This document shows positions 822 through 53,685 of a DNA stretch of 64,000 bases, in pieces (the stretch's first letter is position 1; each line of letters opens with the position of its first letter). Source of the DNA: Mobula hypostoma (Eukaryota); NCBI RefSeq assembly GCF_963921235.1, contig NC_086102.1, forward strand, positions 155,000,001-155,064,000, in the 5' to 3' direction. The translations under genes were made by a program, and so were the position numbers. Under the pieces are notes generated by a model. The model was not told the origin of the DNA and did no database searches. It was given only the letters and a program-made list of their open reading frames with translations.

Positions 822-1060
822 ACCCGCGAGTTTTGTAACTTGTTTGTTGTCTGAATGAGATCTGAGTGCACAAAATCATGTTCAATTTCTTACAGCAATG
901 CTTAGCTAACAGTACAATGTCCCAATCATCCTCGAATGGTGTTATTACTATTCACAGCCTTTTTTTAAACTTTTAGATACTTACTTTATAGCCACGAAAA
1001 CTTTATAAATAGCTTGGGGTTGGCACCGAATGGGCCGCTGGCTCTGTCTCATCAGAATTT

Positions 1061-1196
1061 GGTCCTGATGAGGGGTCTTGGCCTGAAACGTCAGCTGCAT
1101 ATTCATTTCCATGGATGCTGCCTGACCTTTGGAGTCCCTCCGGCATTTTGTGTGTGTTGCTCTGGATTTCCAAGATTTGCAGAATCTCTTGTTTTT
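1061..1196 (+). mobile_element. Short Penelope-like 3' fragment with a hammerhead motif at 1061-1097 (core intact, stem I degraded)
   Basis: ggtc CTGATGA ggggtcttggcct GAAACGTC agctg, followed by the gatgctgcctg...gcagaatctcttgttt terminus shared with the other PLE copies. Confidence 0.7.
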
Positions 1197-1322: not shown

Positions 1323-1439
1323 GGAATGGCACTGCTTGTAACAGAACATGGGATGGCTGGCTGTGCTGGGATGATACTCCTCCAGGGACAGTGGCTGTCC
1401 AACGGTGTCCAGATTATTTTCAAGACTTTGATCCATCAG
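1323..1439 (+). CDS. calcrl: calcrl coding exon, extracellular hormone-binding domain part 1
   Basis: Acceptor ttttcaccag, donor gtaaga; 117 nt, phase 1/1. Translates [38 protein letters not shown], with the class [16 protein letters not shown] and CPDYF motifs. Not called by the ORF track in this frame. Confidence 0.95.
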
Positions 1440-2809
1440 GTAAGAACACCCATTAAATCATCATTCTCAGCTGAAGTAATCACCGTGCTAACTTTTGGCA
1501 AAGTTCAGGTTAAAAGACCAATCATCTCCATTAGTTTTGCCTAATCTCAGCAGCAGCTGTGCTTCATATTTCCTTTCATAATTTTTCCTTAGTATGTGAC
1601 AGGCATGAACAGAGGAAGTTCAGAGCTGCAGTGTACTGGCCCTGATTTTAAATACATTTGGCAAATGGATCACAGGAAGGCTGTTTCTGTGGCAGTACAG
1701 GCAGGTTAGTTCAGAGCTGGCAAACTGAAAGAAGCAGCTTCTGAATTGATTTATTGTCCAAAAGAATGAATTGCTCAGTCTGATTGGAGAACTGCCATAA
1801 AATATTGTAAAGTTGTAAGACCCATGTGTTTTCCCCTCCTGCGTTGAAGGGCTCACTATTTATTACCGTAACACCCTTCCGACACTTTACTTTAACTGGC
1901 TCACAATAGTATACAGGGGTACGTCTATGATGTGTCTTTTTCAGGATGTCATCACTCCCTGTATGTTTGTCCAGATGTGAATATTCAACAGCTGCAGAAT
2001 GAACATAGAAGGCAGAGTAGGCCACTATATCTCTTTAAGCCTTTTCGGACATTCATTGAGATTATGACAATTTTGTAACTTTACTTCAAATACCTGTCTT
2101 TTTCCCAACTCCCTTAATACTTCTGCTTAGCATAAAGCTACCTAACAACTGGCGAAGAACCAACTGTTGTTTACAGAAGGAAGTGCATAATGTTCATTTT
2201 TGTTTTTAGTATTGTATTCTTTCTCAATGTCACTAATTTTTAGGCCATATCCCCTATTTGTGCACTCACAATCAGAACAAATGGTTTCCATCTATGACTT
2301 CCTCTGCTTTCAAGGTTGCTATATCCTTCCAAAGGCATGATGTTCAACTGAACACAATCCTCCAAACAAGTTGTTTTAGCTGCAGTGTAATTTATAAGAA
2401 CTTGTATCCTACTCATGTAAATTTCAAACTCACTACTCAAAGCCTTTAAGATTTTTTTCAAAGGTCTATTTAATCTTAACAATCTTAATAACAAAGGGAC
2501 AAAGCCCCCTTTACCACAAAGAACTTTAATAATATCCCTTAACTCATGAAGTTGCAACAACTGAGTTTCTGTATACCTGTAATTCAGGTCATGGAAGAGG
2601 TTTGGAGACCTGCAGAATTTTGTAGTACTATGTACACCTACTGTAGTCATTTCCGTAGACGTGCATTTGGGAAGTTCAGGTAAGGTTGGAATCAAGCAGT
2701 TGACCGATGCATATATCTATCAACAGGATGGAACAGCCCATCTGATCCGATGAGCAGCATACCCAGTAAACCAAGAATTTTACACTATTTTAATCACAGT
2801 ACAATTTTA

Positions 2810-3000
2810 CCAAGACCGATTAACCTACCAACTGGTACGTCTTTAGTCTGTGGGATTGCTTCCTCTGGAGCATATGGAGGAAACCCACGCAGTTACGGGG
2901 AGAATTTACAGAAACCTTACAGAAGGTGCTGGAAATGATTTGCAAATTCCCAGGCCCTGAGCTGTAACAGCATTGTGCTAACTGCTGTGCTAATATAGTG
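2810..3000 (-). mobile_element. SINE remnant (V-SINE/HE1-like)
   Basis: Contains the ggaggaaacccacgcagttacggggaga core; similar decayed copies at about 11350-11540, 16620-16900 and 42375-42477/45748-45810. Confidence 0.5.
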
Positions 3001-4115
3001 CCCCTTTTATGCGGCACCTTATCAAACACCTTCTGGAAATCCAAGTACCCCCCCCCCATCCACTATGTTCATTGCATTCTCAAACTGCAGTGAGTTTGTC
3101 AAATAGAACCTTCGTAAATCCATGCTGTGCCAGCCTGATGGAGCCAGTTCTATTCAGATGTCTTGCTAATTCTTAATGGTAGCTTCAAGCATTTTCCCAC
3201 CTATAGACATTAAACTGCTGACCTACAATAACCTGCCATTTGCCTCCATCTTTTGTTTTGAAACAATAGCGTGACATTCAGTGTCTTCCAATCCACTGTG
3301 CTGGGATTTGTAAGCCCCTCAAGTCAACTGCCATCCCACTCTTACATGCATCAGATACAGTATTTCTTGGTTTATCTCTATGCCATGTAATATTTTTATT
3401 CAGTGGCCTGTAGTTAATTCCCACCAGAGATCTTCCCCCTTTACTATTCCCTGTCTATATCCAGATGGACTCAACATTCTGCTCTTTAGATCTTATATCA
3501 CCTCTCACAATCACCCAGATCTTAATGTTAATTATCAGCGCGATTCCACCTCCTTTACCTTCATGCTTTTCATCGAGTCATAGAGCACTGCAGCACAAAA
3601 ACATGCCCTTCGGCCCATTTAGTTCATGCTGGATTGCTATTTTGCCTGGTCCTATCGACCCGCACCTGAAGGATAGCCCTCCCGTTCATGTACTTATCCA
3701 AACTTCTCTTAAGTGTTGCAATTGAATCTGCATCCACCACTTCTGCTGGCAGCTTGTTTGACATTAGAACTACCTCCAAGGAAAAAAGTGCTCCCTCAAA
3801 ATATTTTATCTTTTGCCCTTAATCTCTGATTTATTCTCATCCAACCTGAGGGGAAATAGCCTGCAAGTATGCTCCTTATCTATGCCCTTCATAATTTTAT
3901 ATACCTCAAGAAGATCTACACTCATTCTCATGTGCTTCAATGAATAACGTCCTAACCTGTCAACCTTTCCCTATAACACAGGTCCTCAAGGCCTGATGAC
4001 ATCCTTGTAAACTTTCTCTGTGCTTTTTCCATCTTATTGATATCTTTCCTGTATGTGGGTGACCAGAACTACACACAATACTCCAAATTTGGCCTGACCA
4101 AAGACTTTTACAAGT
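3000..4115 (-). mobile_element. CR1-clade LINE ORF2 and 3'-end fragments
   Basis: Minus-strand YLDFQKVFDKVPHKR RT motif near 3000-3050; a CR1-type 3' end at about 3575-4115. Confidence 0.6.
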
Positions 4116-4789
4116 TTGTTTCCTACAGTATTACCCAATACCCTTGGATATTTAATTCCCAATTATCTCCAACCTGCAACATTTCTGTGATGGCCAGCAA
4201 GTCATGTCCATTTGCACTAATTTGTGATATTAATTCACTGACCTTGTCTCAAATACTATGGGTGTTCAGATAGAGCGCCCTTACACTCATTAACCTTTAA
4301 GGATCTAGTAACTTCTGTGTCTTTTGCATTTCACCTTTCTGTATGCTACTCTGACTTACCTGAATTTTTGCTTCAGTCTCTGCATTGCTTCTCTTGCCAG
4401 CCTCATTAGGCCCATTGTCTTTTAGTCTCCGTTCTTCCAACACAATAATCCTACGTTACTCAAATTCTTTTTCATTGCATTTCACCTTTCCTTTGAGTTT
4501 CTACACTATAACTTCTCAAATTCCCTTCTTAAAACTTGCTTCATTCCTTCTTTTGAAGTTAGTCCTTAAAATTTGCTTTTGAAAAGAAACTGCTGTAATA
4601 TTATGATGGGATGAGTGTTTGAATCTTGTGAAAAAGGCATGTCATTAACATCCTTTGTGACTTCTTTTTACACTGATGGCATTATATGTTGCTCTTTCCC
4701 CTACTTACCGTGAAGTACCTGAAGGTAAATATGTTTCCCATTATTCAACGGCATAAGTGGACCAGAATACTTTTGTAGCAAAAAAAAAG

Positions 4790-5425
4790 CCACACGAGGA
4801 ACTTAATCAGAATATATGGAGGAAGTAAACAGCCAATTTTTCAGATTGAGACCCTTCATCTGGACTGACACAGCAGAGCAGAGATAGTCAGCATGAATAG
4901 TTGAGGCCAAAGGGTGTGTCAAGAGCTGGCCACAATAGGTGGAGACAACTGATAAGGGGTTGATTGGCAGATGAAGTTAGGTGGGGAGGAAAGGGCAGAG
5001 AGAGTGATGAAGACTTGGAGGCGATAGGTGGAGGTGACAAATGGGAGAAGATTATAAAATCTTAAAAAAAGGAAGATGAAGAGGGTAACCAAATAAGGGA
5101 GGTGGGTGGGCAGGGAGAGGGGTAAGCAGTGTGTGAGGGGTAGAGGGGAAGAAAAGTGCATAAAAGGGGATTGTGTGTGTGGTCTGGGAGAAGAGTGTGT
5201 GTGAAAGGACCTAGATTGCTCAGAAGGGGAAATAAAGAGACAGAGAGGATGCTGATTTCCTGAAACTGGAGTATTCACTGTTCTTGTAGTGCAATATGAG
5301 GTGATGTCCTTCTATTTTGCATTTGACCTCACTGAGCAGTGGAGTTCAAGGGCAGACTGTTTGGCATAGAAATGAAAGTTGAGCTAACTTGCAACTGGCA
5401 GCTCCAATTGTCCATTGTGGACAGA
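4790..5425 (-). mobile_element. Old, diverged Penelope-like 3' fragment
   Basis: Same order as the 6931-7500 copy: decayed hammerhead (gagacccttcatctggactg), purine-rich tract, end of GIY-YIG. Confidence 0.55.
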
Positions 5426-6992
5426 ATAATTTGTGTACATATGCCTTCAGGCTCAAGCATCTTTGCATATTTCATTGAAACTGAATGTACCTAATAGGAA
5501 ATACTTCCAATCTAACAAATTTAATCTTGGATGCTTACTTTATACCAATGATTAAAGTAAAAGCCTTGACAGTAAATTTGGTGTATAACATGAAAAGTGA
5601 TAGTATCTACTAACATGAAAATAGGTGGTATATTATGCTTCCTTGCTGGAGCTTGGTTAAAGACATGGGTACAATAACACCATTTAAAATGTATTTGGTC
5701 AGAAGGTTTATAGAGACCCAGGCCAAACACAAGTGTATAGGACTGGCTCAAATAGTCATCTAGGCTGGCATGGGTGGGTTGGGCTGAATGGCCCATTTCC
5801 ATGCTATATAAATCTATGATGCTATGACTCTGAGATCCCCTAAATAGAGTAACTGCTTTTTACTCTGTGGGAAGATGCTCAGAAACCAAAAATAAATGAA
5901 TTACAGATGCAATTTCCAAACCTGATAAAATGAAGCAAAGCAGGTATTGGTTAGTGTGATGGGTTCTGCTCATTGTAATAAGGCCACAGCTTCTTTGAAG
6001 ACTAAATTACATTATTTTGAAATAAAAGGAACATGAGAAGGTAATTCCAATGTCATTAATCTGCATCAAGAAATGTTACAGCTTTATAGCCTTGAGCATA
6101 TTCTAAATTCAGATTGAATGTGTATTGACCGTTACATTCAGATGCTGTCAGATAGGGATGATGAGCGCCTTACCCCTTGTGTATTCATCGAGATTGAATA
6201 CTTACTCAAGGATAGAACATTTCATAAATGGATCAAATTTATTTTATTTATTCATCTTTAGCTATAGGGCTTCATTTTGATTAATACACACAGTTCTTCA
6301 AACATTTAACAACATTACAATTATGGTAAATATTCTGATTTCTGAAAGTACAGTGGATTCCAGTAAATTGGGCCATTGCTTAAACAGGGCAGCTGTTTAT
6401 TTGGGACAATTCTTAAAGAAAAAAAACTTATCAAGAAAATAGCCATTGTTTATTTGTGGCACTGTGCCACCTAATAGCGACAGAAGACTGTTACCAAACA
6501 ATTTCTAACTAGCATTAGATATGTGGACTTGCATAGCCGTTTTACACTACACTGTGGTTAGAGTGAATAGTTTTTAAATAGTCTCATTTGCATGTGCTTG
6601 TATTTTAAAAAATCATTAATTTTTGTCACTGATAGTTGGTGAGAAATAAGCAGTAAGACCATTTACTGCGGTTTCAAGCATTCAGGCTTGGAAATGCTAA
6701 GAATCGGCCAGGAGTGAAAGTGAAATATTTTCACTATTTCAGCAAGTTGGGAACTATGAAAAAGTTGAAGGTATCAGCAATCATCTTGACTGTTGCAATG
6801 AAAATGAAGAGTTGAAGGATGTAATTGTCAAAAATTGTATGAAGGCAGTCCATTACCTACACTAGATGTTTGCATTGATTTTGTTCATTGGCAGTGTTAG
6901 TCCTCCATTGATAACAATAGGGAACTAATAGCAACACACATCAAAGTTGCTGGTGAATGCAGCAGGCCAGGCATCATCTCCAGGAAGAGGTA

Positions 6993-7030
6993 CAGTCGAC
7001 GTTTCAGGCCGAGACCTTTCGTCAGGATTA
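6993..7030 (-). ncRNA. Minimal type I hammerhead ribozyme motif (core intact, one stem I mismatch)
   Basis: Minus strand reads TAATC CTGACGA AAGGTCTCGGCCT GAAACGTC GACTG. Confidence 0.7.
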
Positions 7031-7320
7031 ACTGAAGGAAGAGTTAGTAAGAGATTTGAAAGTGGGAGGGGGAGGGGGAGATCCAAAATGATAGGAGAAG
7101 ACAGGAGGGGGAGGGATGGAGCCAAGAGCTGGACAGGTGATTGGCAAAGGAGATATGAGAGGATCATGGGACAGGAGGGCCAGGGAGAAAGACAAGGTGG
7201 GGGGGGACCAGAGGATGGGCAAGGGGTATAGTCAGAGGGACAGAAGGAGAAGAAGGAGAGTGAGAGAAAGAATGTGTATAAAAATAAGTAACAGATGGGG
7301 TACGAGGGGGAGGTGGGGCA

Positions 7321-7760
7321 TTAGCGGAAGTTAGAGAAGTCGATGTTCATGCCATCAGGTTGGAGGCTACCCAGACGGAATATAAGGTGTTGTTCCTCCA
7401 ACCTGAGTGTGGCTTCATCTTTACAGTAGAGGAGGCCGTGGATAGACATGTCAGAATGGGAATGGGATGTGGAATTAAAATGTGTGTCCACTGGGAGATC
7501 CTGCTTTCTCTGGCGGACAGAGCGTAGGTGTTCAGCAAAGCGGTCTACCAGTCTGCGTCGGGTCTCGCCAATATATAAAAGGCCACATCGGGAGCACCGG
7601 ACGCAGTATATCACCCCAGCCGACTCACAGGTGAAGTGTTGCCTCACCTGGAAAGACTGTTTGGGGCCCTGAATGGTGGTAAGGGAGGAAGTGTAAGGGC
7701 ATGTGTAGCACGTGTTCCGCTTACAAGGATAAGTGCCAGGAGGGAGATCAGTGGGGAGGG
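7321..7760 (-). pseudogene. PLE GIY-YIG endonuclease with Cys-rich linker
   Basis: PCKRNTCYTC linker is in frame with VIYCVRCSRCGLLYIGETRRRLVDRFAEH...RLEEQHLIFRLGSLQPDGMN. Confidence 0.9.
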
Positions 7761-7829
7761 ATGGGGGGAACGAATGGACAAGGGAGTCGTGTAGGGAGCG
7801 ATCCCTGCGGAAAGCAGGGGGTGGGGGAA

Positions 7830-8360
7830 GGGAAAGATGTGCTTAGTGGTGGGATCCCGTTGGGGGTGGTGGAAGTTATGGAGAATAATATGTTGGACCC
7901 AGAGGCTGGTGGGGTGGTAGGTGAGGATCAGGGGAACCCTATTCCTAGTGGGGTGGCGGGAGGATGGAGTGAGAGCAGAGGTGCGTAAAATGGGGGAGAT
8001 GCGTTTGAGAGCAGAGTTGATGGTGGAGGAAGGGAAGCCCCTTTCTTTGAAAAAGGAGGACATCTCCCTCGTCCTGGCATGAAAAGTCTCATCCTGAGAG
8101 CAGATGCGGCAGAGACGGAGGAATTGTGAGAAGGGGATGGCATTTTTGCAAGAGACAGGGTGAGAAGAGGAATAGTACAGATAGCTGTGAGAGTCTGTAG
8201 GTTTATAGTAGACATCAGTGGATAAGCTGTCTCCAGAGACAGAGACAGAAAGATATAGAAAGGGGAGGGAGGTGTCGGAAATGGACCAGGTAAATTTGAG
8301 GGCAGGGTGAAAGTTGGAGGCAAAGTTAATAAAGTCAATGAGTTCAGCATGCGTGCAGGA
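7830..8360 (-). pseudogene. PLE reverse transcriptase C-terminal/thumb region, truncated and frameshifted relative to the endonuclease
   Basis: FHPALKFT, LPFL(Y)LSV, TDVYYKPTD, SSHP and AIPFSQFLRLCRICS motifs in ORF 7644..8399. Confidence 0.88.
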
Positions 8361-8847
8361 AACTAATAATAATAATAGGGAACTAATATATAGTTTCATA
8401 ATACTGTAGTAGTATTGATTGTGTTTTAATTGTTCTGTATTTCATTTAAATACAGAATTTTTTACTCAGTTAAACGATGGTTTTTTAAAAATACCGTTTT
8501 AACTGTTTCCATGAAAATTTGGTTAATTGTGGCATCAGCTTAATTGTGTCAAAATGTACTGGTCACAATATGTCACAATTAACCAGAATCCACTGTATAT
8601 CATAAAAATTGCAAACCAGGGAAGAACATTTGTAAAGCAGACCCACTGATTTCATTCCTGATGAGTAACATTTAATGCATCTCCAAAAGAATAACGTAAC
8701 CAACCAGAATCCTCAGCAAGGATGAAACAAATTCAGTATTGCAGAGTACAATAATATTTTGTATAGGGTTTACTGAAAGCTGGATACTCATATTATAAAA
8801 GTTGCTGGTGAACGCAGCAGGCCAGGCAGCATCTCTAGGAAGAGGTG

Positions 8848-8885
8848 CAGTCGACGTTTCAGGCCGAGACCCTTCGTCAGGACTA
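8848..8885 (-). ncRNA. Minimal type I hammerhead ribozyme motif (intact)
   Basis: Minus strand reads TAGTC CTGACGA AGGGTCTCGGCCT GAAACGTC GACTG; stem I is UAGUC/GACUG. Confidence 0.8.
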
Positions 8886-9716
8886 ACTGAAGGAAGATTG
8901 AGTAAGGGATTTGAAAGTTGGAGGGGGAGGGGGAGATCCAAAATGATAGGAGAAGACAGGAGGGGGAGGGATGGAGCCAAGAGCTGGACAGTTGATTGGC
9001 AAAAGGGATACGAGAGGATCATGGGACAGGAGGTCCGGGAAGAAAGACAAGCGGGGGGACCCAGAGGATGGGCAAGGGGTATATTCAGAGGGACAGAGGG
9101 AGAAAAAAGAGAGTGAGAGAAAGAATATGTGTATAAAAATAAGTAACAGATGGGGTACGAGGGAGAGGTGGGGCATTAGCGGAAGTTAGAGAAGTCTATG
9201 TTCATGCCATCAGGTTGGAGGCTACCCAGACGGAATATAAGGTGTTGTTCCTCCAACCTGAGTGTGGCCCATTCCCATTCTGACATGTCTATCCACGGCC
9301 TCCTCTACTGTAAAGATGAAGCCACACTCAGGTTGGAGGAAAACCTTATATTCCGTCTGGGTAGCCTCTAACCTGATGGCATGAACATCGACTTCTCTAA
9401 CTTCTGCTAATGCCCCACCTCCCCCTCGTACCCCATCTGTTACTTATTTTTATACACACATTCTTTCTCTCACTCTCCCTTTTCTCCCTCTGCCCCTCTG
9501 AATATACCCGAATATACACCTTGCCCATCCTCTGGGTACCCCCCCCCCGCCTTGTCTTTCTTCCCGGACCTCCTGTCCCATGATCCTCTCGTATCCTTTT
9601 TGCCAATCACCTGTCCAGCTCTTGGCTCCAACCCTCCCCCTCCTATCTTCTCCTATTATTTTGGATCTCCCCCTCCCCCTCCAACTTTCAAATCCCTTAC
9701 TCACTCTTCCTTCAGT

Positions 9717-9754
9717 TAGTCCTGACGAAGGGTCTCTGCCTGAAACGTCGACTG
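9717..9754 (+). ncRNA. Minimal type I hammerhead ribozyme motif (intact, sense to the calcrl pre-mRNA)
   Basis: TAGTC CTGACGA AGGGTCTCTGCCT GAAACGTC GACTG; predicted cleavage after GUC at 9749. Confidence 0.8.
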
Positions 9755-10678
9755 CACCTCTTCCTAGAGATGCTGCCTGGCCTGCTGCGTTCACCAGCAA
9801 CTTTTATGTGTGTTGCTTGAATTTCCAGCATCTGCAGAATTCCTGTTGTTTACTCATATTATTCCACTTTTATGTAAGGAGTTCTGTTTGGGATTGACAA
9901 TAACTTAAGTGCTACAATAGCACTTGGAATTTGCTTGTAACTATGAATTTTTTTTGTAATTATATTATTGATACCATTTCTTAATGCTAAGCTTCAGTTA
10001 CCAATAAAAATAATCTTTATTGGTAACTCATCTTTTTCTCATTATTCCTAAAATTTGGAAAAGTTGTACTTAATATTTAGTAGAATAACCAGTGAATCCA
10101 TTATTAATAAAATGTAGTTCATTAAAATTTTGAACTATTAAATATATTTGTCTATAATATTAAACCACTAAATATATTTGTTTATTATATTAAGAATAGC
10201 CAGTGTAGCAACTGTCATGATACTTAAAAGCTAAATTTTTAAAACTAGTTTTGATATTTAGTATTTAAGTATTTAAATACACTATTAACAAAGTTGTTTA
10301 TGATTTCAAACCAAACGGAAACTGAGGATATCGTATTTTCCTTTTCCATTAATAATGTACAGCCTAAGAAACTCAATCTGTGGCTTTAGGCCATTTTTAG
10401 ATGATTAATAAAAGGTCTCATTGAGTAGGTATCTGCAAATGGAAAGAATAAATGTGAATGTAATTAATATTTATGCAATGGGAGTTTGTTGTGGCAAACT
10501 GTACATTCGCTGCACCTGCAGACTTTTTTCATATTGCAGGTTCGCCTGCTGTTTAAAGTTAATTTCAGCTTTCCATTCTGGTAGAACTATTATTTCTCTT
10601 AGCATAACTTTACAGTAAGTTTTAGTATGATGTTTATTATACTTTGGGTGATATTTATTCTGCTCATTTCTTATATAG

Positions 10679-10791
10679 AGAAAGTAATAAAGATTTGTGA
10701 TGAAACTGGAAAATGGTTTCGACACCCAGAGAGTAACAGAACCTGGACGAACTACACACAGTGTAATGCACACACAAAGGAAAAGCTAAAG
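10679..10791 (+). CDS. calcrl: calcrl coding exon, extracellular domain part 2
   Basis: Acceptor ttatatag, donor gtagaa; 113 nt. Translates (E)[37 protein letters not shown]. Confidence 0.96.
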
Positions 10792-10880: not shown

Positions 10881-10972
10881 ACTGCATTGAATCTATTGTA
10901 CTTGGCAGTGATTGGGCATGGATTATCAGTGGCTTCGCTGCTGATTTCTCTCGGCATATTCTTTTACTTCAA
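10881..10972 (+). CDS. calcrl: calcrl coding exon, TM1
   Basis: Acceptor caatacag, donor gtaagt; 92 nt. Translates [30 protein letters not shown](K). Confidence 0.96.
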
Positions 10973-12315
10973 GTAAGTATTTCACAGTTTTTTTTGTCTA
11001 TGTTACTGATCCATTATATGGATGCTCTTTGAGCCTGAATGTGATGCATTGGAATAGTAGACTCTCTTTAAGTAGCCAAGCAAAGAGTATGCTTGTATTG
11101 TGATGTTGATACTATTCAATAATAAAACAAATTTGTGTAACCTAAATGTCAATGAATGTTATTTTTCTATTTTATTTAAATAGCAAGCTAAATATTCAGC
11201 ATGGGTACATATGCAGAATATTTTTCATATACTCATAGCAGTTCAGAAAGAGATCATGCATCCCATCTGATCCAGGGGAGCAATCTCATCAGTCCCATTT
11301 CCCTTCTTCTCATTTCCCTGTAACTCTGCAATTTACTCCCTTTACACATGCCCAACAACTCCCCATTCAATCCCTTAAGCCGTTTAACTGTGTTAGGGCT
11401 AATTTACTGGAGCCAATTACCCTACCAATGCTTCTGGAACATGGGGGAAATCATATGCAGTAACAAAACATGTGCAAACTTTGCTCAAGCAGCACCAGAG
11501 GTCGGGATTGAACACAGATCTCAGGAGCTGTAATGCATTTTATAGACTGGTGTTGAAAATGTAAGGTCCAACTGAAATAAAAAAAATTGCCAATTTGTGC
11601 TTTGCTGGCTTCTGTTATGTATATCACTGTTATACACTTGCTGTACGAGATTAATTGGGAGTCAGAAATGCTGCATTGCACTTTTAAATTCTCTGCTAAA
11701 TTCTGTGTTGCTGTGAGTCCCAGATAGGAAATGGAGATATGCAAGACAAAGCGTCTGGCTGGGTTTACATGGGTGTCACCAAGATAGGTACTGAAGAATA
11801 TTAGAACTTTGCGCAAGTTACTAATTAGTAAAAGAGAAAAGACATCAGGTCAGGACAGTACATTTATTTGTTAGTAATCTCATTTCAAAGAAGGGTCAGA
11901 GATTAATTACTCACTCCTGCTGAAAACAATGATAGTTGTTTATCTTAGATTTATCTTGCGACACCACTTCCTTGCAGTGGATCTACAGAGGAAATGTAGT
12001 AGCATGTCATTTGTAAAACTCTGATGCACTGATTTGCTTTCTGACATTTGCAGAGTAGAAAGAAAAAATGTTTTCCACCAAGGATTTAAGTTCTTTAGTG
12101 GCCCACTGCTTTGAAGGGAAGAGGTGCTCTGAGAGCCCTATTATATATTATATACATCAGATTGCTGCAAATCAGGTCACTCAAAACGTTCTTCTCAACA
12201 AACACTTCTGGTCACTGAGTACTGGATTACTGGTGTCTTATTATACTAGTCTTGATTCCCACACTAATGTGAAATGCTGTTTATAGGTAGCTGCGGAAGA
12301 TGATAATGATCAGGC

Positions 12316-15660: not shown

Positions 15661-15908
15661 CAATTAAATTGACTAGAGCCAGCGGCTTAGACAAGGAGAT
15701 GCTATCAGAGCTAAGGCATGGTGTTTTTGTAGAATTGCAAGTGACACTTTGCTCCTTTTGATTTCAGACAGAAATAGAGGAGCTGCCAGTTCTAAGCAAG
15801 GCAATGCCAGCATGAGTCAAAATGAGTGATTTTAATGATAACATTCAAAGAACAAAGAGAAGAGCAAACAGTTGAATTAATCTGTTTCCTTTCATTTTTC
15901 TTTTGTAG

Positions 15909-16035
15909 AAGTTTAAGTTGCCAGAGGATAACGCTTCACAAAAATCTATTTTTCTCATTTGTTTGTAACTCCATTGTCACCATCATCTCGCTAACAGCTG
16001 TGGCAAATAATCAAAAGTTTGTTGAAAGTAATCCG
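15909..16035 (+). CDS. calcrl: calcrl coding exon, ICL1-TM2-ECL1
   Basis: Acceptor ttttgtag, donor gtaagt; 127 nt. Translates [42 protein letters not shown]. Confidence 0.97.
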
Positions 16036-19000
16036 GTAAGTTTATCAGACAGTTGTTGTAAACTGCAGATATTAGTTTGATATCTGAAGGAGAGCAAAAG
16101 CTTGTTTTTAAACTTGGCAGTGTTTACAGTTCCAGAATATCATAATGTGCTTCACACTTCATTGAAGGGTAGTCATTATTGTAATGTAGCAAATGCAAAT
16201 TTATACAAAACTACAGAAACAACTGAGTGATGAATATACAGATAATCTGTTTCTGGTACAAACAACTGAAAGATAAATACATTATTGAAGAGGAACTGAG
16301 GGAAGACACAGGTCTTCTGTGAAATTGTACCAGGGCATTTTTCACATTTTTCTTCAAGGGTGAATGTGGACATCATTTCTTGTCCTGTGTTCTGGGTGAC
16401 ATCTCTGATAACGAAACACTCTCATAGCTGCATTAACATATAACTGCAGATTCCTGTGCTCATTTTCTGAAGTAAGACTTGAATCCTGAACCTTTCACAG
16501 AGGCAAGAACATCAAAGTCCTAAGCGTTTCTGGTGGAGGAAAACTGTCACTGAATGAACAACATTTTTATACTGCTCCTGTAATGTAGCAAAACATCACA
16601 AGGTACCAAATACAAGTAATAGAAGGATGGCACAATATTACACCTTGACCCAGGTCTAATCCACACCTCAGAGTTTGCCCGATTTGTTTGTGAGTAGGTT
16701 GGAGGAACTGGGTCCTCCCCCATTTCAAAGACCTGTGGACTAGTGGGTTAATTGTCGACTATAAATTGCCCTAGGTGAGTGATAGAATGTGGCGCTGGGT
16801 AGGAGACGTATCTTTGATAAGCATGTGGGCATAAAAAATGGAATTAATATAGGATGGTTGATAGTTGGCAAGGATTTGATGGGCCAAAAGGTCTGTTTAT
16901 CCACTGATGTTAGGTTTTAACACAATTTCATAAAGAAACATTCCGGCAAACATCCAAAAAATTGGCCAAGGTAATTTGTCTAAGAATTTGCAACAACTTA
17001 AAGGAGCAAAGAGTGGAACAAGAGTACAAAGATTTAGTGAACAGTTATAGAGCCTCTGGCTTGGTAGGTGACAGCATGATTATTGACAGCAGGGACAATT
17101 ACATCAAAGAATTGTCAAGTAAAGGAGGAATGTAGAAACGTGAGTAGGTTGTGGGGCTGGGGAGTGAGATGCATGACTATGAACAATTTAATTACAAGGC
17201 TGGGAATTTTAAAATCAAAACACTGCATTACTACACGCTACAGTAGTTCAGAAAGCATGAGGCTAATGGACTTCATATAATTTGTAACTCAGGCAGTGGG
17301 GTTCAAATGACTACAAATTCACAAAAGATAGAAGGAGATAGCCTGGCGCGCAGTGTAACATAATCATTGTTTTCTCTACTGAAACCCTCCATCCTTGGAT
17401 AATCTTTGTCCATGAAGAATTAAAGCAGGGATAGAATCTAATGAAGTTACAGTGGTGGAAGTGCAAGGGAAAAGCTCACCACCAATGTTGCTAACAACCT
17501 GCTTCAGTTTTACTTACACACATTCCACAAAGTAGCAGGAAAAATAGACAACTATGTAGAACTCTTCAACAAATGGCCCGTGACCATGGAGAAGATGAAA
17601 GGGTCAGTTTTCAGGAGATTGATGCAACCTTTAGACTTGCCCTGACATTTCTGCATTGTCTTTTGCTGCTCACATTTATGTTACTCCCCGAGTGGCAGGG
17701 AAGTAAACACAGATGAGTGATTCTGCAGCAAGACAATTAATCAGTATGTGAGAAATGTGTATCAGAATCCTGTAATATTATGGAATCTACTGAGCTTGTT
17801 TAAGCTGCTTCCATCTATTTTAATGACAGCAGGAATTGCTCAGCAAAAGTGAATTGCATTTGTCAGTCTTCAATTGGCTTATTCCCATGGGTAACAGTTT
17901 GCAAACTTCTTTCTGTTTTTGTGGAAGTGCAGGTTACTGACAGTAGTTCCCAATTAACTGAGAAATTAGATAGAAATATCTGCTCACACAATATTAAACA
18001 ACAAAAATGCATTTGACAGCCAAGTTCCCATTTTCAGCATATGTACGTATTCATGTACATTTTTCACAGTTGCTAAACCCCATTAGAGTGAAGAATGACA
18101 GGTATAATTTCTATCAGAAATATGTGTTAAATATGTGTATTTGATATTAATCTAATCGTGCAATTGATCCCAATATTACTATAACAAAAATAGTAATTCA
18201 AAATGATTTGACTCTCAATATTAATATCCCTACTAATTCTGGGCAATAGAGTCATAGAAACAGCACAGCACAGAAACTGGCCCTTCAGCCCATCTAATAC
18301 ATGCCAAACCATTAATCTGCCTAAATTTCTGCCAATGTTTGATGGAAGTGAATTAATACACTGCAAATTACTTTAGGTCAAAAATAAACATGAGTTTTTG
18401 AAAGATTATACTTCTAAAATATTTTTTAAAATATAATTCAAAGCTACCAGAAAAGCATGAAAATAATTTAATCTTGCTTGGAGTGTCACCAAATATTCAC
18501 TGAACTCTTTTCACCTGCTGTGCTCTCATGACAGTAATGATTATTGATCTTAATCTTGCTGGTAGATATGACCTACCTTTGGAAATAATGTTCCCATCAG
18601 ACGGAAATTAATGAGTTTTGTATACAGCATTTCCAGCAACAGTCATCGTGTTGTTCCCATCTTTCCAGCTTTAAGTTAGATGAATATTCTGTATTCTTTA
18701 TCTCAGAGCCAATCAGTGCAGTGAAAGACCTTTCAGCCCATTTTAGTTTATGTGACTCTTTGAAAGAGCATCCTCATTAGTCTCATTCCTTTGCACATTC
18801 ACATACCCTTTCAGTTCTTTCCACTTCAAGCATACATCCATTGCCATGACAATAAAACATATTAAACAACTTTTTAAAAAAAGCATAGTTATTAACTTCT
18901 GCTTAGAGGTCAAAGTGATTAGCTGTGTTTAATTGTGTAGTTCTATGGCACTATTGAAGCTTAATGGAAGTGACTTTGAAATTCCTAATAGGTTATCTGA

Positions 19001-20880: not shown

Positions 20881-22538
20881 TAATGCCAATGACACAGGCT
20901 CTCTGAGAAAGAACAAAGTGATCCTGAAAACTTGTGGTTAGTTGTGATGTACTACACAGCGCAACAGTCTTGGGCACATATATATAGCTAGCATGCTTAA
21001 GGCTTTTGTACAGTGCTAGATTCATCAATGTGGAGCGGAGAGTGAGTTTGTAGATCTGGCAGGAGCAAAGGATGTTGGGAATGGTGAGGATGGAGTATTG
21101 CGGGAGGGCTGTGCGACAGGTGGCAGAGAAGTAATGTCAGGGGCGGTGGGGAATGAGAGTTGTGGGTGCAAGCACACCCACCCCTGAGATACCAGACAAG
21201 ATTTGATTCCAAGCAACTGGTTTACTGATCATTAGAGAATGTCTCCCTGGTGGTTCTTGCTCCCTCCCCTTTTCCCAATGTTGATTCCCCTCTCCCTGCC
21301 CTCCTTCCCCCTCAGTTCACAATGCTGATGCATATCATAGTCAGGTTTATCATCACTCACATATGTCATGAAATTTGTCTATTTTTGTTGCAGCAGTACA
21401 GTGCAATACACAAAATTACTACAGTGCTGGGCAAAAGTCTGAGGCACTGTGGCTTATGTGCCTAAGGCTTCTGCACAGTATTGAAAATTATCCTTTTCAA
21501 AAGGGGAGGTATAGATTATGATTCTTGTGTTTGACATGTGCTCACAAGTTCAGTGTAGTTGGAGAGAAGGCAAATAATACCAAAGCATATCTTATTAGCT
21601 CTCCATGTCTCATAGTGATTTGTTGCATTCCTGGCAGCTCACACGGTTGGAATGAGAACCTACACACATGCACAAGAATCAACACAAACAGTTTTATGGC
21701 TTGCACTGACAGAGTTAATACTGAATCAGCAGACTTGGCATGCAGAATGTGACAACAGAAGGCCAATGCATTCAAATTAGATGATTCGATTTTTCGATGG
21801 AGAATTCACTTTAAAACTTTTTTTTAGAGTTACTGTTCAAATATATTTACTTTCTCAAAAATAGTTTCTAAATATTTTGTTTTGCAGTGAGGAAATGAAT
21901 TTTCAGATCTTTGAAGTGGGTTAATTTTCTCCAGTCACTGACAATTTTTTGTTACATGAGGAAGGACTAATAGAATTCTGTAATCCTGAACAACCATATT
22001 TCCTTCGTACTTTTTAAAGTCTTTGCATTTTATTTCATTCTTATAATAAACAAACAGTTTATTCCTTGTATTACTGGTACAAGATTAATTAAAGGAGAAG
22101 AATCAACATAACTAAATTGCCTTAGCTTCCTTATTTTCTTCTATCCAGGCTCAATTTCTATCGACCATAGTAATAATTGTTCCCAAGTGTTGCTAGGCTG
22201 CGTGGAAACGCAGGGGAAATGTGCTTTGCTGTTTGCTCGGGTCACCCTCCCAGCTAATTACAGAACAGTTCCCAGTTTTGGACTGGTGTAATTAACTATC
22301 ACCCACTACTTTACATTACATAATTATAAGGAAAGAACTATTGCTTGAGTAGCACAGGCTGCTTTCCATGCCATATAACCATATAACCTTGAATAAAATC
22401 TTTGCCACAAACTTAAACTATATTTAATGCTGGCGTGAATCTGACTTTGGTTCTCAAAGTTCCCATAGTTTCATCTTGTGCTGAGTGAGGTGCCCCAAGC
22501 ACAGTCTCAATGTAAGTATTCTTCCTTTTACCTTGCAG

Positions 22539-22692
22539 GTCAGCTGTAAAGTGTGTACATTCATCCATTTGTACTTAATGGGCTGCAATTATTTCTGGAT
22601 GCTGTGTGAAGGCATTTACCTTCACACACTGATTGTTGTTGCTGTCTTTGCTGAGAAACAACACTTGGTATGGTATTATCTTCTCGGATGGG
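22539..22692 (+). CDS. calcrl: calcrl coding exon, TM3-ICL2-TM4 start
   Basis: Acceptor ccttgcag, donor gtaagt; 154 nt. Translates [51 protein letters not shown](G). Confidence 0.97.
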
Positions 22693-22760
22693 GTAAGTAC
22701 TTTCCAAAGCTCAGTACTGTCCGTCATATGACCCTTGAAATTCTGAAATTCAGCATAGTA

Positions 22761-22899
22761 CAGGTCGACCTTCACTAATCCGGTTCCTTCGATAATTCGG
22801 CACTGATTATGCTTAATCTGATCCTTCTGTAATTTGGCGTTTTCACTAATCCAGCACTCCTCAGGTCTCAATGGTGCCGGATTAGTGGAGGTTGACCTG
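22761..22899. mobile_element. 139-bp MITE (Tc1/mariner-pogo type)
   Basis: TIRs caggtcgaccttcactaatccgg and ccggattagtggaggttgacctg with TA on both sides. Confidence 0.85.
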
Positions 22900-24965: not shown

Positions 24966-25080
24966 GTAAGTAACTTTTTGTGTATGTGTGTATTTTTGCA
25001 TTTCAATAAAAAAGATTATATATATCTTTTGATGAAAATAGGATTCTACTCACATTTTGAACTGAATCTCTTATACACAG

Positions 25081-25147
25081 CTGTTGGATTAGTTCAGAAA
25101 CTCATCTGCTATATATCATTCATGGTCCTATTTGCGCAGCATTACTG
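25081..25147 (+). CDS. calcrl: calcrl coding exon, ECL2-TM5
   Basis: Acceptor atacacag, donor gtaagt; 67 nt. Translates [22 protein letters not shown]. Confidence 0.96.
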
Positions 25148-25287
25148 GTAAGTTTACATGAGAAGTAAGTGTAATCTATTTACCAAAAAAAGTGGTAGAA
25201 CAATGGAATATCTATTATGCAAACAGCACAATTGCAAAGAAAGTGTTTACATCTGGAAAATCCTAACAGCTGTTTCTGTATCTGTAG

Positions 25288-25506
25288 GTAAACTTGTTTT
25301 TCTTGCTGAATATCGTGCGTGTCCTTATAACCAAGTTGAAAGTGACACACCGAACAGAATCGAACCTGTATATGAAAGCTGTGAGGGCAACCCTGATATT
25401 AGTCCCACTGCTTGGGATCCAGTTTGTCCTGGTCCCGTGGAAGCCAGAAGGCCGAATAGCTGAAGAAGTCTATGATTATTTGATGCATATTTTAATGCAT
25501 TATCAG
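25288..25506 (+). CDS. calcrl: calcrl coding exon, TM5-ICL3-TM6-ECL3-TM7 start
   Basis: Acceptor atctgtag, donor gtaagg; 219 nt. Translates [73 protein letters not shown]. Confidence 0.97.
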
Positions 25507-25874
25507 GTAAGGAATATTTCCAAGCTTAATTTGAAGGGTCTCAGCCCAGTTCCTTCAGCATTTTGTACGTGTGTGGCTGTGGACTTCTAGCATCTGCAGA
25601 TTTTCTCTTGATAACTAATATTTTTTCCTGCTTGCCCCACACCTGGCCAATGAATAAACATATTTCGAGAAAAATAGATACATTGTTAGAGGAGCTTGGC
25701 AGCATTTTTGTCCCATGCATGATTCTCTCAGCGGGAAACACATCCTTTCTGAAGTGCACAAAACATGTAATATATTAGCAACTTCTATATTAAATCACTG
25801 GAACCATATTTTAGAAGACCAGTGTAATGGTTATCCCTGTTATACTGCATATTTACAACATCTATGTTGTAAAC

Positions 25875-30206: not shown

Positions 30207-30444
30207 CTAATAGAACTTGAGTTTTAAGGTAACTGCTTTCACTTTTAATATTGTTCCTATTAGAGATGAAGGATAAGCTCCCCATTTAAGGATGTGGATT
30301 GGAAACTTTGTAATGTACAAGAAAAATATAAGGCATTAGTCAGTGACTTTTGTATTTCCTGAAAAGCAGCAAGGAATAAATAGCAACACACATAAGAGTT
30401 GCTGGTGAACGCAGCTGGCCAGGCAGCATCTCTAGGAAGAGGTA

Positions 30445-30482
30445 CAGTTGACGTTTCAGGCCGAGATCCTTCGTCAGGACTA
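30445..30482 (-). ncRNA. Minimal hammerhead motif (core intact, first stem I pair mismatched)
   Basis: Minus strand reads TAGTC CTGACGA AGGATCTCGGCCT GAAACGTC AACTG. Confidence 0.65.
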
Positions 30483-31254
30483 ACTGAAAGAAGAGCTTGT
30501 AAGAAATTTGAAAGTGGGAGGGGGAGGGGGAGATCCAAAATGATAGGAGAATACAGGAGGGGGAGGGATGGAGCCAAGAGCTGGACAGTTGATTGGCAAA
30601 AGGGATATGAGAGAATCATGAGATGGGAGGCCCAGGGAGAAAGAAAGGGGGAGGGGGGAAGCTCAGAAGATGGGCAAGGAGTATAGTGAGAGGGACAGAG
30701 CGTAGGTGTTCAGCGAAACGGTCTCCCAGTCTGCGCTGTGTCTGTCCACCAGAGAAAGCAGGATCTCCCAGTGGCCACACATTTTAATTCCACATCCCAT
30801 TCCCATTCTGATATGTCTATCCACAGCCTCCTCTACTGTAAAGATGAAGCCACACTCAGGCTGGAGGAACAACACCTTATACTCTGTCTGGATAGCCTCC
30901 AACCTGATGGCATGAACATTGGCTTCTCTAACTTCCATTAATGCCCCTCCTCCTTCTCGTACCCCATCTGCTATTTATTTATGTTTTATTATATTTATAT
31001 ATATAGTTTTTTTGCTCTCTTTCCTTTTTCTCCCTCTGTCCCTCTCACTATACCCCTTGCCCATCCTCTGGGCTTTTCCCCCCCTCCCCCTTTACTTTCT
31101 CCCTGGGCCTCCTGTCCCATGATCCTCTCATATCCCTTTTGCCAATCACCTGTCCAGCTCTTGGCTCCATCCCACCCCTCCTGTCTTCTCCTATAATTTC
31201 AAATCTCCCCCTCCCCCTCCCACTTTCAAATCTCTTACTAGCTCTTCTTTCAGT

Positions 31255-31292
31255 TTGTCCTGACGAAGGGTCTCGGGCCAAAATGTCGACTG
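31255..31292 (+). ncRNA. Decayed hammerhead motif (GAAAC changed to AAAAT)
   Basis: TTGTC CTGACGA AGGGTCTCGGGCC AAAATGTC GACTG. Confidence 0.5.
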
Positions 31293-32304: not shown

Positions 32305-32346
32305 GGCTTATTGGTGGCTACAATATTCTGCTTCTTCAATGGAGAG
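32305..32346 (+). CDS. calcrl: calcrl coding micro-exon, TM7
   Basis: Acceptor ttttcttag, donor gtattg; 42 nt, phase 0/0. Translates GLLVATIFCFFNGE. Confidence 0.95.
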
Positions 32347-53542: not shown

Positions 53543-53685
53543 CTGCTGATCTACCCCAGGCCTCCAGACAAAGTTTCAAGCTGACACTTTCATTTTGACT
53601 ATGCCTAGATGACCAAAGTGTAGCTGATCCCACACCTTAATATGCCCAGAAGAATGGTTTTGGTTCTAAATTTTCTTATGTTATT

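What the first reader, a model, noticed from the sequence alone, without database searches (positions are those of the whole stretch)
8785..9862. 1-kb palindromic PLE insertion with an intact hammerhead on each strand, inside a calcrl intron
Seen: two near-identical inverted arms of about 475-490 bp (8795-9268 and 9321-9807) around a 52-nt spacer, bounded by one 12-bp TSD, so this is a single insertion event. Whichever strand is transcribed contains one intact hammerhead and its near-exact antisense. In the calcrl pre-mRNA the sense hammerhead lies about 925 nt upstream of the exon at 10679. Inference: the upstream arm is transcribed first and would trap the ribozyme in a long hairpin. That would be a built-in off switch letting such insertions be tolerated in introns, while creating an ADAR or Dicer substrate.
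Basis: partly seen in the sequence, partly recalled or inferred. Interest (0 to 1): 0.72.

Follow-up and report, generated by a model that had tools for sequence, protein, structure and literature searches.

The report
Penelope retroelement inverted-pair insertion, calcrl intron
The 1-kb palindrome is real, but it is an ordinary, decaying insertion of a Penelope-like jumping gene, which typically lands as a back-to-back inverted pair carrying a small, probably inert hammerhead motif on each arm.

Summary
Two inverted arms (8797-9268 and 9321-9807) lie inside an exact 12-bp target duplication (8785-8796 / 9851-9862), in the 9.2-kb calcrl intron between exons 1323-1439 and 10679-10791.

One correction changes the reading. 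The 52-nt "spacer" is element sequence: the end of a GIY-YIG endonuclease ORF that other copies share. The insertion is therefore a 5'-truncated Penelope-like element (9269-9850, with a 43-nt tail) plus an adjacent inverted, shorter, tail-less copy.

This head-to-head layout with a one-sided tail is published as a hallmark of these elements. It occurs twice more in this window, and earlier notes of this scan record it on other DNA of the same genome.

The hammerheads are the published "minimal" type without helix III. Every core base is present, but 10.1-11.1 is a G·U wobble, Rfam finds nothing, and a single motif of this type (tested for Schistosoma mansoni) showed no detectable cleavage in vitro.

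That follows from how the element integrates and is no evidence for a selected off switch. Editing and small RNAs could not be tested. Verdict: sound, ordinary, low interest.

The parts
8785..8796 (.). Left copy of the 12-bp target-site duplication TACTCATATTAT
   Evidence: Exact direct repeat D13, flush with the outer end of the left arm.
8797..9268 (-). Inverted, 5'-truncated, tail-less copy of the PLE 3' end. Read on the - strand it is element sense, equivalent to 9321-9807.
   Evidence: Alignment of the arms; blastn 92.9% to the right arm. At 9268/9269 the antisense copies elsewhere in the genome continue with element sequence, so this arm is truncated there (table 7).
8845..8885 (-). Minimal hammerhead motif of the left arm (helix I 5' strand, core, helix II, GAAAC GUC, helix I 3' strand). 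Predicted cleavage after C8853.
   Evidence: Pattern scan; alignment A1.
9269..9850 (+). Direct, 5'-truncated PLE copy: ORF end, 3' untranslated region and tail.
   Evidence: Copies at 7521-6930(-) and 30741-31388(+) share the sequence from 9268/9269 onwards. Sense copies elsewhere in the genome continue 5' of 9268 with ORF sequence (table 7).
9269..9410 (+). Remnant of the last 47 codons of the PLE ORF (C-terminus of the GIY-YIG endonuclease). The family stop is TAA 9408-9410; a private premature TAA lies at 9369-9371.
   Evidence: The sister copy translates to ...GVIYCVRCSRCGLLYIGETRRRLVDRFAEHL...DGMNIDFSNFR* and matches Pfam GIY-YIG PF01541 at 24.1 bits, above the 22.6 cutoff. C>T at 9369 is listed.
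9717..9754 (+). Minimal hammerhead motif on the calcrl sense strand: helix I 9717-9721/9750-9754, core C3-A9 9722-9728, bulged A 9729, helix II 9730-9733/9738-9741, G12-A14 9742-9744, ACGU 9745-9748. Predicted cleavage after C9749.
   Evidence: No Rfam hammerhead hit.
9808..9850 (+). 43-nt 'tail' extension, present on the right arm only.
   Evidence: The arm alignment ends at 9807. The same tail is present in some and absent from other copies in the window, matching the optional 30-40-bp one-sided PLE tail (PMC8557442, PMC3846280, PMC11167929).
9851..9862 (.). Right copy of the target-site duplication
   Evidence: D13.
1323..1439 (+). Upstream calcrl exon (context): 5' boundary of the host intron 1440-10678.
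   Evidence: Its translation matches CALCRL 6e3y_R residues 72-108, E=1e-15. AG acceptor and GT donor are visible.
10679..10791 (+). Downstream calcrl exon (context).
   Evidence: Matches CALCRL residues 110-146. A 3855-nt RNA-type contig covers only 10677-10789 with no mismatch, so it is spliced (table 8). The next exon, 10881-10973, matches CALCRL 147-177 at E=7e-11 against 4e-4 for CALCR.

Best explanation
This is one retrotransposition event of a canonical endonuclease-bearing Penelope-like element (PLE) into an AT-rich site of a calcrl intron. As is typical for this class, it landed as a head-to-head inverted pair inside one 12-bp target duplication. The pair consists of a 5'-truncated sense copy (9269-9850: end of the GIY-YIG ORF, 3' region with a minimal hammerhead motif, 43-nt tail) and an adjacent inverted, slightly shorter, tail-less copy (8797-9268). 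Inferred mechanism: the PLE endonuclease cuts both target strands about 12 bp apart, each 3'-OH primes reverse transcription near the 3' end of element RNA at one of two nearby start sites (with or without the tail), and the two cDNAs are joined at their 5'-truncated ends with 0-1 nt of microhomology. Self-priming (snap-back) of a single cDNA is the alternative route and is not excluded for this copy. Since insertion the arms have decayed independently (about 3.9% apart). In the calcrl pre-mRNA the insert is predicted to fold into a roughly 470-bp imperfect hairpin with a 52-nt loop, which buries the sense hammerhead motif. That motif is a helix-III-less, dimer-dependent type with a G.U at 10.1-11.1 and is most likely inert with or without the hairpin. 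The insertion is best read as a neutral passenger. The sequence anatomy is shown; the mechanism and the inertness are inferred.
For: Arms, target duplication and boundaries. The 'spacer' is element ORF sequence shared with other copies; family continuation at 9268/9269 in thousands of genomic contigs: table 7. GIY-YIG domain on the sister copy. Tail on one arm only, and optional among copies. Two more target-duplication-flanked head-to-head pairs lie in the same window (30371-31408; 62747-62986), each with the tail on one arm only. In those two, the arm that would be the copy under snap-back carries sequence the other arm lacks (45 nt of ORF in one, the tail in the other), which favours two independent primings. 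At all 18 sites where the arms differ, at least one arm matches other family copies (16 cleanly, 2 split), i.e. private decay after insertion. [quoted passage not shown] Folding: -948.9 kcal/mol hairpin; 48 of 49 motif bases paired to the other arm, and the right copy alone does not adopt the hammerhead helices either; the isolated monomer prefers a rod that pairs core G5-G8 with C15.2-C17.
Against: No read-level proof of the palindrome: only short contigs were available, and none listed spans the centre or the whole insert. The reverse-transcriptase part is absent from this truncated copy, so assignment to a PLE clade rests on the endonuclease end and the architecture. There is no covariation support for the hammerhead helices among the 11 window copies. 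For this particular copy the left arm is a strict subset of the right, so snap-back self-priming fits equally well. Inertness of the ribozyme is inferred from published assays on other PLE motifs, not measured here.
Confidence: 0.85

Rival explanations
1. One reading: the palindromic form is a built-in off switch. The upstream antisense arm traps the sense hammerhead, so such insertions are tolerated in introns where solo sense copies would be selected against, and the hairpin also acts as an ADAR or Dicer substrate.
For: The hairpin is predicted to sequester 48 of 49 motif bases, and the antisense arm is transcribed first (gene on the + strand). A 2026 preprint reports that tandem hammerhead retrozymes, which it derives from PLEs, are depleted from introns in Xenopus (10.64898/2026.07.22.740005), so some selection against genic hammerhead repeats may exist. 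No paper proposing this idea turned up.
Against: The layout is produced by the integration mechanism whatever the site (PMC8557442, PMC3846280). The motif lacks helix III and needs a second sense copy to form an active dimer; the single motif tested from Schistosoma mansoni showed no detectable cleavage (PMC4209133), and no cleavage-site read ends were seen for the anole element (PMC11167929). A solo sense copy with an intact core lies 127 nt upstream of calcrl exon 1323 without a partner. Even without the left arm, the predicted fold does not adopt the hammerhead helices. The window census is far too small for an orientation test.
Confidence: 0.06
2. Same element and same single event, but formed by snap-back: one cDNA primed on the bottom strand reached 9269, folded back with a 52-nt loop, copied itself, and was joined to the upstream target end.
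For: In this copy the left arm is a strict subset of the right at both ends, and the arms look identical at origin. Self-priming was proposed for PLE inverted junctions in PMC3846280.
Against: The two other inverted pairs in the window carry sequence in one arm that the other lacks, in both directions. The left arm ends close to where tail-less copies of the family end; that is expected from an independent internal start of reverse transcription (PMC11167929) and would be a coincidence for read-back synthesis. The anole PLE protein extends both strands in vitro.
Confidence: 0.3
3. Assembly artefact: a fold-back chimeric read or a mis-join created an inverted duplication of a single PLE copy.
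For: PLE tandem and inverted structures are known to cause assembly problems (PMC8557442). No contig listed spans the centre.
Against: The arms differ at 18 substitutions and 3 indels, including a 10-bp duplication, which a chimeric copy of one locus would not show. An exact 12-bp target duplication brackets the whole unit. The same architecture recurs with target duplications twice more in 64 kb. A 246-nt contig matches 8576-8821 without mismatch across the left junction, though with only 25 nt inside the element (table 8).
Confidence: 0.03
4. Two independent PLE insertions that happen to abut head to head.
For: The family is extremely abundant (summed contig depths in the millions), and PLEs can target PLE sequence (PMC11167929 used an ORF-pLTR junction as target).
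Against: A single 12-bp target duplication flanks the composite and none flanks either arm alone. The arms belong to the same subfamily and share diagnostic bases.
Confidence: 0.02

Closest known systems
Canonical EN+ Penelope-like elements (Penelope/Poseidon/Neptune clades): inverted-pair ('inverted pLTR') insertions with a one-sided tail
   Same: C-terminal GIY-YIG endonuclease ORF end, heavy 5' truncation, adjacent inverted 5'-truncated copy, one target duplication around the whole unit, an optional 30-40-bp tail on one end only, AT-rich target, and a hammerhead motif in the terminal repeat region (PMC8557442, PMC3846280, PMC11167929).
   Different: Nothing in kind. This copy is so truncated that it has no reverse-transcriptase part and no direct pLTR, only the two inverted 3' ends. 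The clade was not determined.
Minimal hammerhead ribozymes (min-HHR) of metazoan PLEs (Cervera & de la Pena 2014, PMC4209133)
   Same: Type I topology, CUGANGA and GAAA boxes, no helix III or loop 3, palindromic 15.1-16.1 stretch (ACGU) that allows a dimeric helix III, an unpaired base between positions 9 and 10.1, a short helix I (5 bp), and occurrence as two motifs on opposite strands a few hundred bp apart.
   Different: 10.1-11.1 is G.U rather than the highly conserved G-C. Helix II is only 4 bp (two are G.U) with a tetraloop. Related subfamilies in the window keep G-C or have lost G12, and both changes are CpG transitions.
Inverted-repeat Alu pairs in primate introns (ADAR1 editing substrates)
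   Same: Two retroelement copies in opposite orientation within one intron are predicted to form long intramolecular dsRNA.
   Different: Alu pairs arise from two independent insertions, with arms of about 300 bp and 10-20% divergence. Here one event made a 470-bp pair 4% apart. Editing is documented for Alu pairs and untested here.
L1 twin-priming inversions
   Same: Both target strands are used as primers, giving an inverted 5' segment inside one target duplication.
   Different: In twin priming, as I recall it (Ostertag & Kazazian 2001; no paper fetched here), the inverted segment is the part of the element upstream of the direct segment, so no palindrome forms. Here both arms are the same 3' region.

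Membership tests
EN+ Penelope-like element | GIY-YIG endonuclease domain at the C-terminus of the single ORF | tested here: met
   Sister copy 7324-7803(-) hits Pfam PF01541 at 24.1 bits (cutoff 22.6), E=4.5e-5. The target copy keeps only the last 47 codons (9269-9410), which align to that ORF end.
EN+ Penelope-like element | PLE-type (telomerase-like) reverse transcriptase | not tested
   Absent from this 5'-truncated copy. The sequence upstream of the sister copy is full of stops and was not searched.
EN+ Penelope-like element | Insertion architecture: adjacent inverted 5'-truncated copy, one target duplication, 30-40-bp tail on one end only | tested here: met
   The same architecture is found at 30371-31408 and 62747-62986. 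The description comes from PMC8557442 and PMC3846280.
EN+ Penelope-like element | Hammerhead motif in the terminal repeat / 3' region | tested here: met
   Motif about 100 nt from the 3' end in all full 3' ends of the family in the window.
Hammerhead ribozyme, minimal PLE type | Conserved core C3 U4 G5 A6 N7 G8 A9 / G12 A13 A14 / A15.1-U16.1 / H17 | tested here: met
   Both arms read CUGACGA ... GAA A C G U C. The arms differ only at 9737, in loop 2.
Hammerhead ribozyme, minimal PLE type | G10.1-C11.1 closing pair of helix II | tested here: not met
   G.U in both arms. Across the 11 window copies the pair is G.U 5, G-C 4, A-U 1, unpaired 1.
Hammerhead ribozyme, minimal PLE type | Unpaired base between 9 and 10.1; palindromic 15.2-16.2 | tested here: met
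   A9729 is unpaired; ACGU lies at 9745-9748. Criteria from PMC4209133.
Hammerhead ribozyme, minimal PLE type | Helices supported by compensatory changes | tested here: inconclusive
   85% of cells are paired, against at most 46% in slid registers, but there are no double-sided changes and the result is no better than shuffles. The sample is only 11 decaying copies.
Hammerhead ribozyme (Rfam families) | Match to an Rfam hammerhead covariance model | tested here: not met
   No hit at gathering score over the whole window or at E<=10 over 8700-9950. This is expected if those models require a helix III, which this motif lacks.
Hammerhead ribozyme, minimal PLE type | Self-cleavage | not testable with these tools
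   Published tests of other PLE motifs: a single motif showed none detectable, and dimers showed low activity (PMC4209133).
Endogenous long-dsRNA substrate of ADAR/Dicer | Clustered A-to-G differences in RNA, or 21-22-nt small RNAs over the arms | not testable with these tools
   All runs are kept as contigs, and the family is so abundant that the arms collect contigs from thousands of copies. Only the duplex prediction is available.

The most novel reading that the evidence does not exclude
Among PLE copies that put a core-intact hammerhead on the sense strand of an intron, the inverted-pair form could be preferentially retained over solo copies, because the co-transcribed antisense arm masks the ribozyme (and any cryptic signals) and routes the RNA to ADAR editing. 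The integration by-product would then double as a tolerance device. Nothing here excludes this, but nothing supports it beyond the folding prediction.
Probability: 0.05. Interest if true: 0.55.

Novelty: already known. Interest (0 to 1): 0.15.

Why it matters
It matters little by itself. It is one more copy of a very abundant retroelement family, with the architecture already described for the class. Three points are practically useful. (1) Annotators should read such 'palindrome plus spacer' units as two 5'-truncated PLE copies with different truncation points, not as a foreign loop. (2) The three target-duplication-flanked pairs in one 64-kb window, each with a one-sided tail and non-nested arms, are natural data that fit the two-strand priming seen in vitro for an anole PLE. 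(3) Genomes this rich in PLE inverted pairs contain many long intronic dsRNA-forming units, which would be a ready test bed for ADAR editing outside mammals if raw RNA reads were analysed.

Tried and rejected
1. Rfam at gathering score over the whole window and at E<=10 over 8700-9950 found no hammerhead. The MIR408 (E=2e-5) and PrrB/RsmZ matches are artefacts of the long hairpin and of the arm sequence, both far below their gathering scores, and were rejected.

2. Covariation test of helices I and II on the 11 motif copies in the window showed no compensatory change and no excess over shuffles. The motif call therefore rests on the core and on published criteria.

3. Public runs. All are kept as contigs of about 85-250 nt over the arms. 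Summed depths run to millions because the family is very abundant, so the 'other letters' reflect paralogues rather than editing or alleles. No listed contig spans the centre. Presence or absence of the insert in the related organisms B and C could not be decided. The useful results were the family continuation at 9268/9269, the variable flanks after 9850, the perfect contig across the left junction, and the spliced contig on exon 10679-10791.

4. Reading the 52 nt as a foreign spacer or captured host DNA was rejected after alignment to the copies at 7521-6930 and 30741-31388.

5. An apparent shared palindrome centre in the copies at 7.5 kb and 30.7 kb proved on reading the sequence to be the inner end of the 30-kb left arm, which reaches 45 nt further into the ORF.

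6. The pair 53105-53543(-) / 54888-55242(+) was considered as a fourth palindrome. It has 1.35 kb of unrelated sequence between the arms and no obvious target duplication, so it was left open.

7. The large protein searches were not used because the family scans settled the protein questions.
Full report
**1. The observation**

Region 8785-9862 was read directly. The repeat finder reports inverted arms 8795-9058/9544-9807 (264 nt, 97%), 9077-9251/9335-9509 (175 nt, 94%), 9053-9086/9510-9543 and 9248-9268/9321-9341. It also reports an exact 12-bp direct repeat, TACTCATATTAT, at 8785-8796 and 9851-9862.

A gapped alignment joins these blocks into one arm pair, 8797-9268 against 9321-9807. Three indels interrupt it: 3 bp, a 10-bp local duplication at about 9510-9519, and a poly-C length difference. 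The arms differ at 18 of 469 aligned positions (p = 0.038, K2P = 0.039). The right arm continues for 43 nt (9808-9850) that the left arm lacks, up to the right target duplication.

An arm pair of this length and identity, bracketed flush by an exact 12-mer, is far beyond chance.

**2. What the 'spacer' is**

A blastn search of the right arm against the window finds further copies. These are 7413-6930(-), 30849-31388(+), 30685-30382(-), 53543-53105(-) and 54888-55242(+), plus shorter 3'-end fragments.

Alignment with flanks shows that the copies at 7.4 kb and 30.8 kb contain the 52 nt of 9269-9320 immediately upstream of the arm sequence, and continue further 5'.

Read on the minus strand, the 7-kb copy translates to ...YPCKRNTCYTCPY...GVIYCVRCSRCGLLYIGETRRRLVDRFAEHLRSV...DGMNIDFSNFR*. 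Its last 160 codons match Pfam GIY-YIG (PF01541, 24.1 bits, above the 22.6 cutoff).

The 'spacer' is therefore the continuation of the right-hand copy into the end of the element's endonuclease ORF:
- The ORF remnant spans 9269-9410.
- The family stop codon is at 9408-9410.
- A private premature TAA lies at 9369-9371.

The read-laying table agrees. At 9268/9269, contigs from other genomic copies run on with ORF sequence on the sense side and with its complement on the antisense side. After 9850 the continuations are heterogeneous flanks (table 7).

The unit is therefore laid out as follows:
- Target duplication, 8785-8796.
- Inverted copy of element positions equivalent to 9321-9807, at 8797-9268.
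- Direct copy, 9269-9850, including the tail.
- Target duplication, 9851-9862.

The inner junction has 0-1 nt of overlap (C9268).

**3. Host gene**

The exons were searched one by one by reference.
- 1325-1438 matches CALCRL chain 6e3y_R residues 72-108.
- 10681-10791 matches residues 110-146.
- 10881-10973 matches residues 147-177 at E = 7e-11, against 4e-4 for the calcitonin receptor.

The splice signals are visible in the sequence.

A 3855-nt contig from a run guessed to be RNA of the same organism lies on 10677-10789 only, without mismatch, as a spliced transcript would (table 8).

The gene is calcrl on the + strand. The host intron is 1440-10678, and the predicted ribozyme cleavage site (after C9749) is 929 nt upstream of the exon.

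**4. The hammerheads**

Rfam finds no hammerhead, either at gathering score or at E<=10 on the region. By hand and by pattern scan, both arms carry the following parts:
- Helix I, 5 bp: 9717-9721 with 9750-9754.
- Core C3-A9, CUGACGA: 9722-9728.
- One unpaired A: 9729.
- Helix II, 4 bp with a tetraloop: 9730-9733 with 9738-9741.
- GAA: 9742-9744.
- ACGU: 9745-9748.
- C17: 9749.

There is no helix III hairpin. The palindromic ACGU can form helix III only between two molecules or two motifs. This is the 'minimal hammerhead' that Cervera & de la Pena (PMC4209133) described in the terminal repeats of metazoan PLEs. It has the extra base between positions 9 and 10.1 and the palindromic 15.2-16.2.

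One of their conserved features is not met. The pair 10.1-11.1 is G·U here.
- Related subfamilies in the window have G-C, or have G12 changed to A.
- C11.1-G12 is a CpG, so both states are ordinary methyl-CpG transitions. This last step is inference.

The 11 motif copies in the window give 85% paired cells in this register, against at most 46% in slid registers. They show no compensatory change and no excess over shuffles.

Predicted folding of the isolated 51-nt motif prefers a rod in which core bases G5-G8 pair with C15.2-C17. That rod scores -12.0 kcal/mol, against -7.5 for the hammerhead helices.

The published tests point the same way:
- A single minimal motif from Schistosoma mansoni had no detectable self-cleavage, and dimers had low activity (PMC4209133).
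- For the anole element, cleavage was not needed for insertion in vitro, and no read ends were seen at the cleavage site (PMC11167929).

'Intact' is thus true for the core bases. It does not imply an active ribozyme.

**5. The architecture is the known one, and it recurs here**

Craig et al. (PMC8557442) state that PLE insertions are highly 5'-truncated. [quoted passage not shown]

Arkhipova et al. (PMC3846280) describe inverted pLTRs inside one target duplication, with a 31-bp tail on one of them.

Cervera & de la Pena noted pairs of minimal hammerheads 100-700 bp apart on opposite strands.

Two further units in this window have the same anatomy.
- **30371-31408.** The target duplication is AAGGAATAAAT. 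The tail is on the right arm only. The left arm reaches about 45 nt further into the ORF than the right arm, and has a 240-nt internal deletion at a CTCTGTCC microhomology.
- **62747-62986.** The target duplication is the 12-bp TTCAATTATTTA. The arms are about 100-130 nt. The tail is on the left arm, which is the shorter one.

Earlier notes of this scan report the same layout on other pieces of this genome, with follow-ups calling it ordinary. I treat those as agreement, not as evidence.

**6. How it formed**

Two published routes exist.
- **Priming on both target strands.** The purified anole PLE protein cleaves and extends both strands. It starts reverse transcription at two nearby internal sites that delimit the tail (PMC11167929).
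- **Self-priming of one cDNA** (PMC3846280).

For the calcrl copy the left arm is a strict subset of the right, so both routes fit. In the other two pairs each arm holds sequence the other lacks, which a simple snap-back cannot give.

The left arm here also stops close to where tail-less copies of the family end. That is expected from an independent start at the inner initiation site.

I favour two-strand priming at roughly 55:30. At all 18 sites where the arms differ, at least one arm matches other family copies (16 cleanly, 2 split), so the arms were near-identical at insertion and have decayed separately.

**7. What it does**

As RNA, 8785-9862 folds into one hairpin of -948.9 kcal/mol with the 52-nt ORF piece as the loop. 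In that fold, 48 of the 49 motif bases pair with the other arm, and the local duplex is -99 kcal/mol.

The step from there to a selected 'off switch' is not supported:
- The layout is a by-product of integration.
- The motif type needs a partner motif and is poorly active even with one.
- The right copy alone is not predicted to adopt the hammerhead helices.
- A solo sense-strand copy with an intact core but a weak helix I ends 127 nt upstream of calcrl exon 1323, with no inverted partner within 2.4 kb.

A preprint reports depletion of tandem hammerhead retrozymes from Xenopus introns. This leaves some room for selection against genic hammerhead repeats, but it concerns tandem arrays that can form dimers.

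Whether the hairpin is edited or diced could not be tested. All runs are stored as contigs, and the family is so abundant that the arms collect paralogous contigs.

**8. Artefact check**

No listed contig spans the centre, so the reads neither confirm nor refute the palindrome. Four points argue against an artefact:
- The arms differ by 18 substitutions and 3 indels.
- The unit has an exact target duplication.
- A 246-nt contig matches 8576-8821 perfectly across the left junction, though with only 25 nt inside the element.
- The layout recurs.

**9. Verdict**

The feature is real, single-event and correctly placed in calcrl. It is a known kind of object in its known form, with a speculative functional gloss that the evidence does not need.

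Noticed in passing
window 30371-31408: Second head-to-head PLE pair in another calcrl intron (between exons near 25288-25500 and 32305). Target duplication AAGGAATAAAT; tail on the right arm only. The left arm reaches about 45 nt further into the ORF and has a 240-nt internal deletion at a CTCTGTCC microhomology. The sense-strand hammerhead is dead (G12>A, C15.2>U).
   Followed up: partly
window 62747-62986: A tiny (about 216-bp) head-to-head PLE pair with an exact 12-bp target duplication TTCAATTATTTA. The left arm is truncated inside the hammerhead but carries the tail. The right arm has the whole motif (G12>A) and no tail.
   Followed up: partly
window 1030-1196 (+): Solo sense-strand PLE 3' end of a different subfamily, with tail, ending 127 nt upstream of calcrl exon 1323-1439. 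The hammerhead core is intact (CUGAUGA...GAAAC GUC) but helix I is weak. No inverted partner within 2.4 kb.
   Followed up: partly
window 6930-7800 (-): Longer 5'-truncated antisense PLE copy in the same intron, keeping about 170 open codons of the CCHC-like and GIY-YIG endonuclease end. Its 3' end lacks the tail. Further upstream the frame is full of stops.
   Followed up: partly
hammerhead positions 11.1-12 in window copies (e.g. 9741-9742, 31279-31280, 39647-39648): C11.1-G12 is a CpG. Copies show either C>U at 11.1 (giving G.U) or G>A at 12 (killing the core), so methyl-CpG decay appears to be the main way these motifs die.
   Followed up: no
window 53105-53543 (-) and 54888-55242 (+): Two more PLE 3' ends facing outwards, separated by 1.35 kb of unrelated sequence and without an obvious target duplication. 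This could be two insertions or a disrupted pair. The + copy has an intact core.
   Followed up: no
window 8500-8660: Another high-copy repeat just upstream of the insertion: contig depths run to thousands in all four runs, and there is a 29-nt imperfect inverted repeat at 8529-8593. Not identified.
   Followed up: no
window 9137-9448 (-): Rfam MIR408 (a plant microRNA precursor family) matches at E=2e-5, 31 bits against a gathering score of 64. It is an artefact of the long hairpin centre and a reminder that PLE palindromes can produce false hairpin-RNA hits.
   Followed up: yes
window 15826-16077, 22485-22775, 25061-25165, 25288-25587, 32305-32472 (+): Further open stretches carrying class-B GPCR motifs ([37 protein letters not shown]) look like downstream calcrl exons. 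They were found by short-motif scan only and not verified.
   Followed up: no
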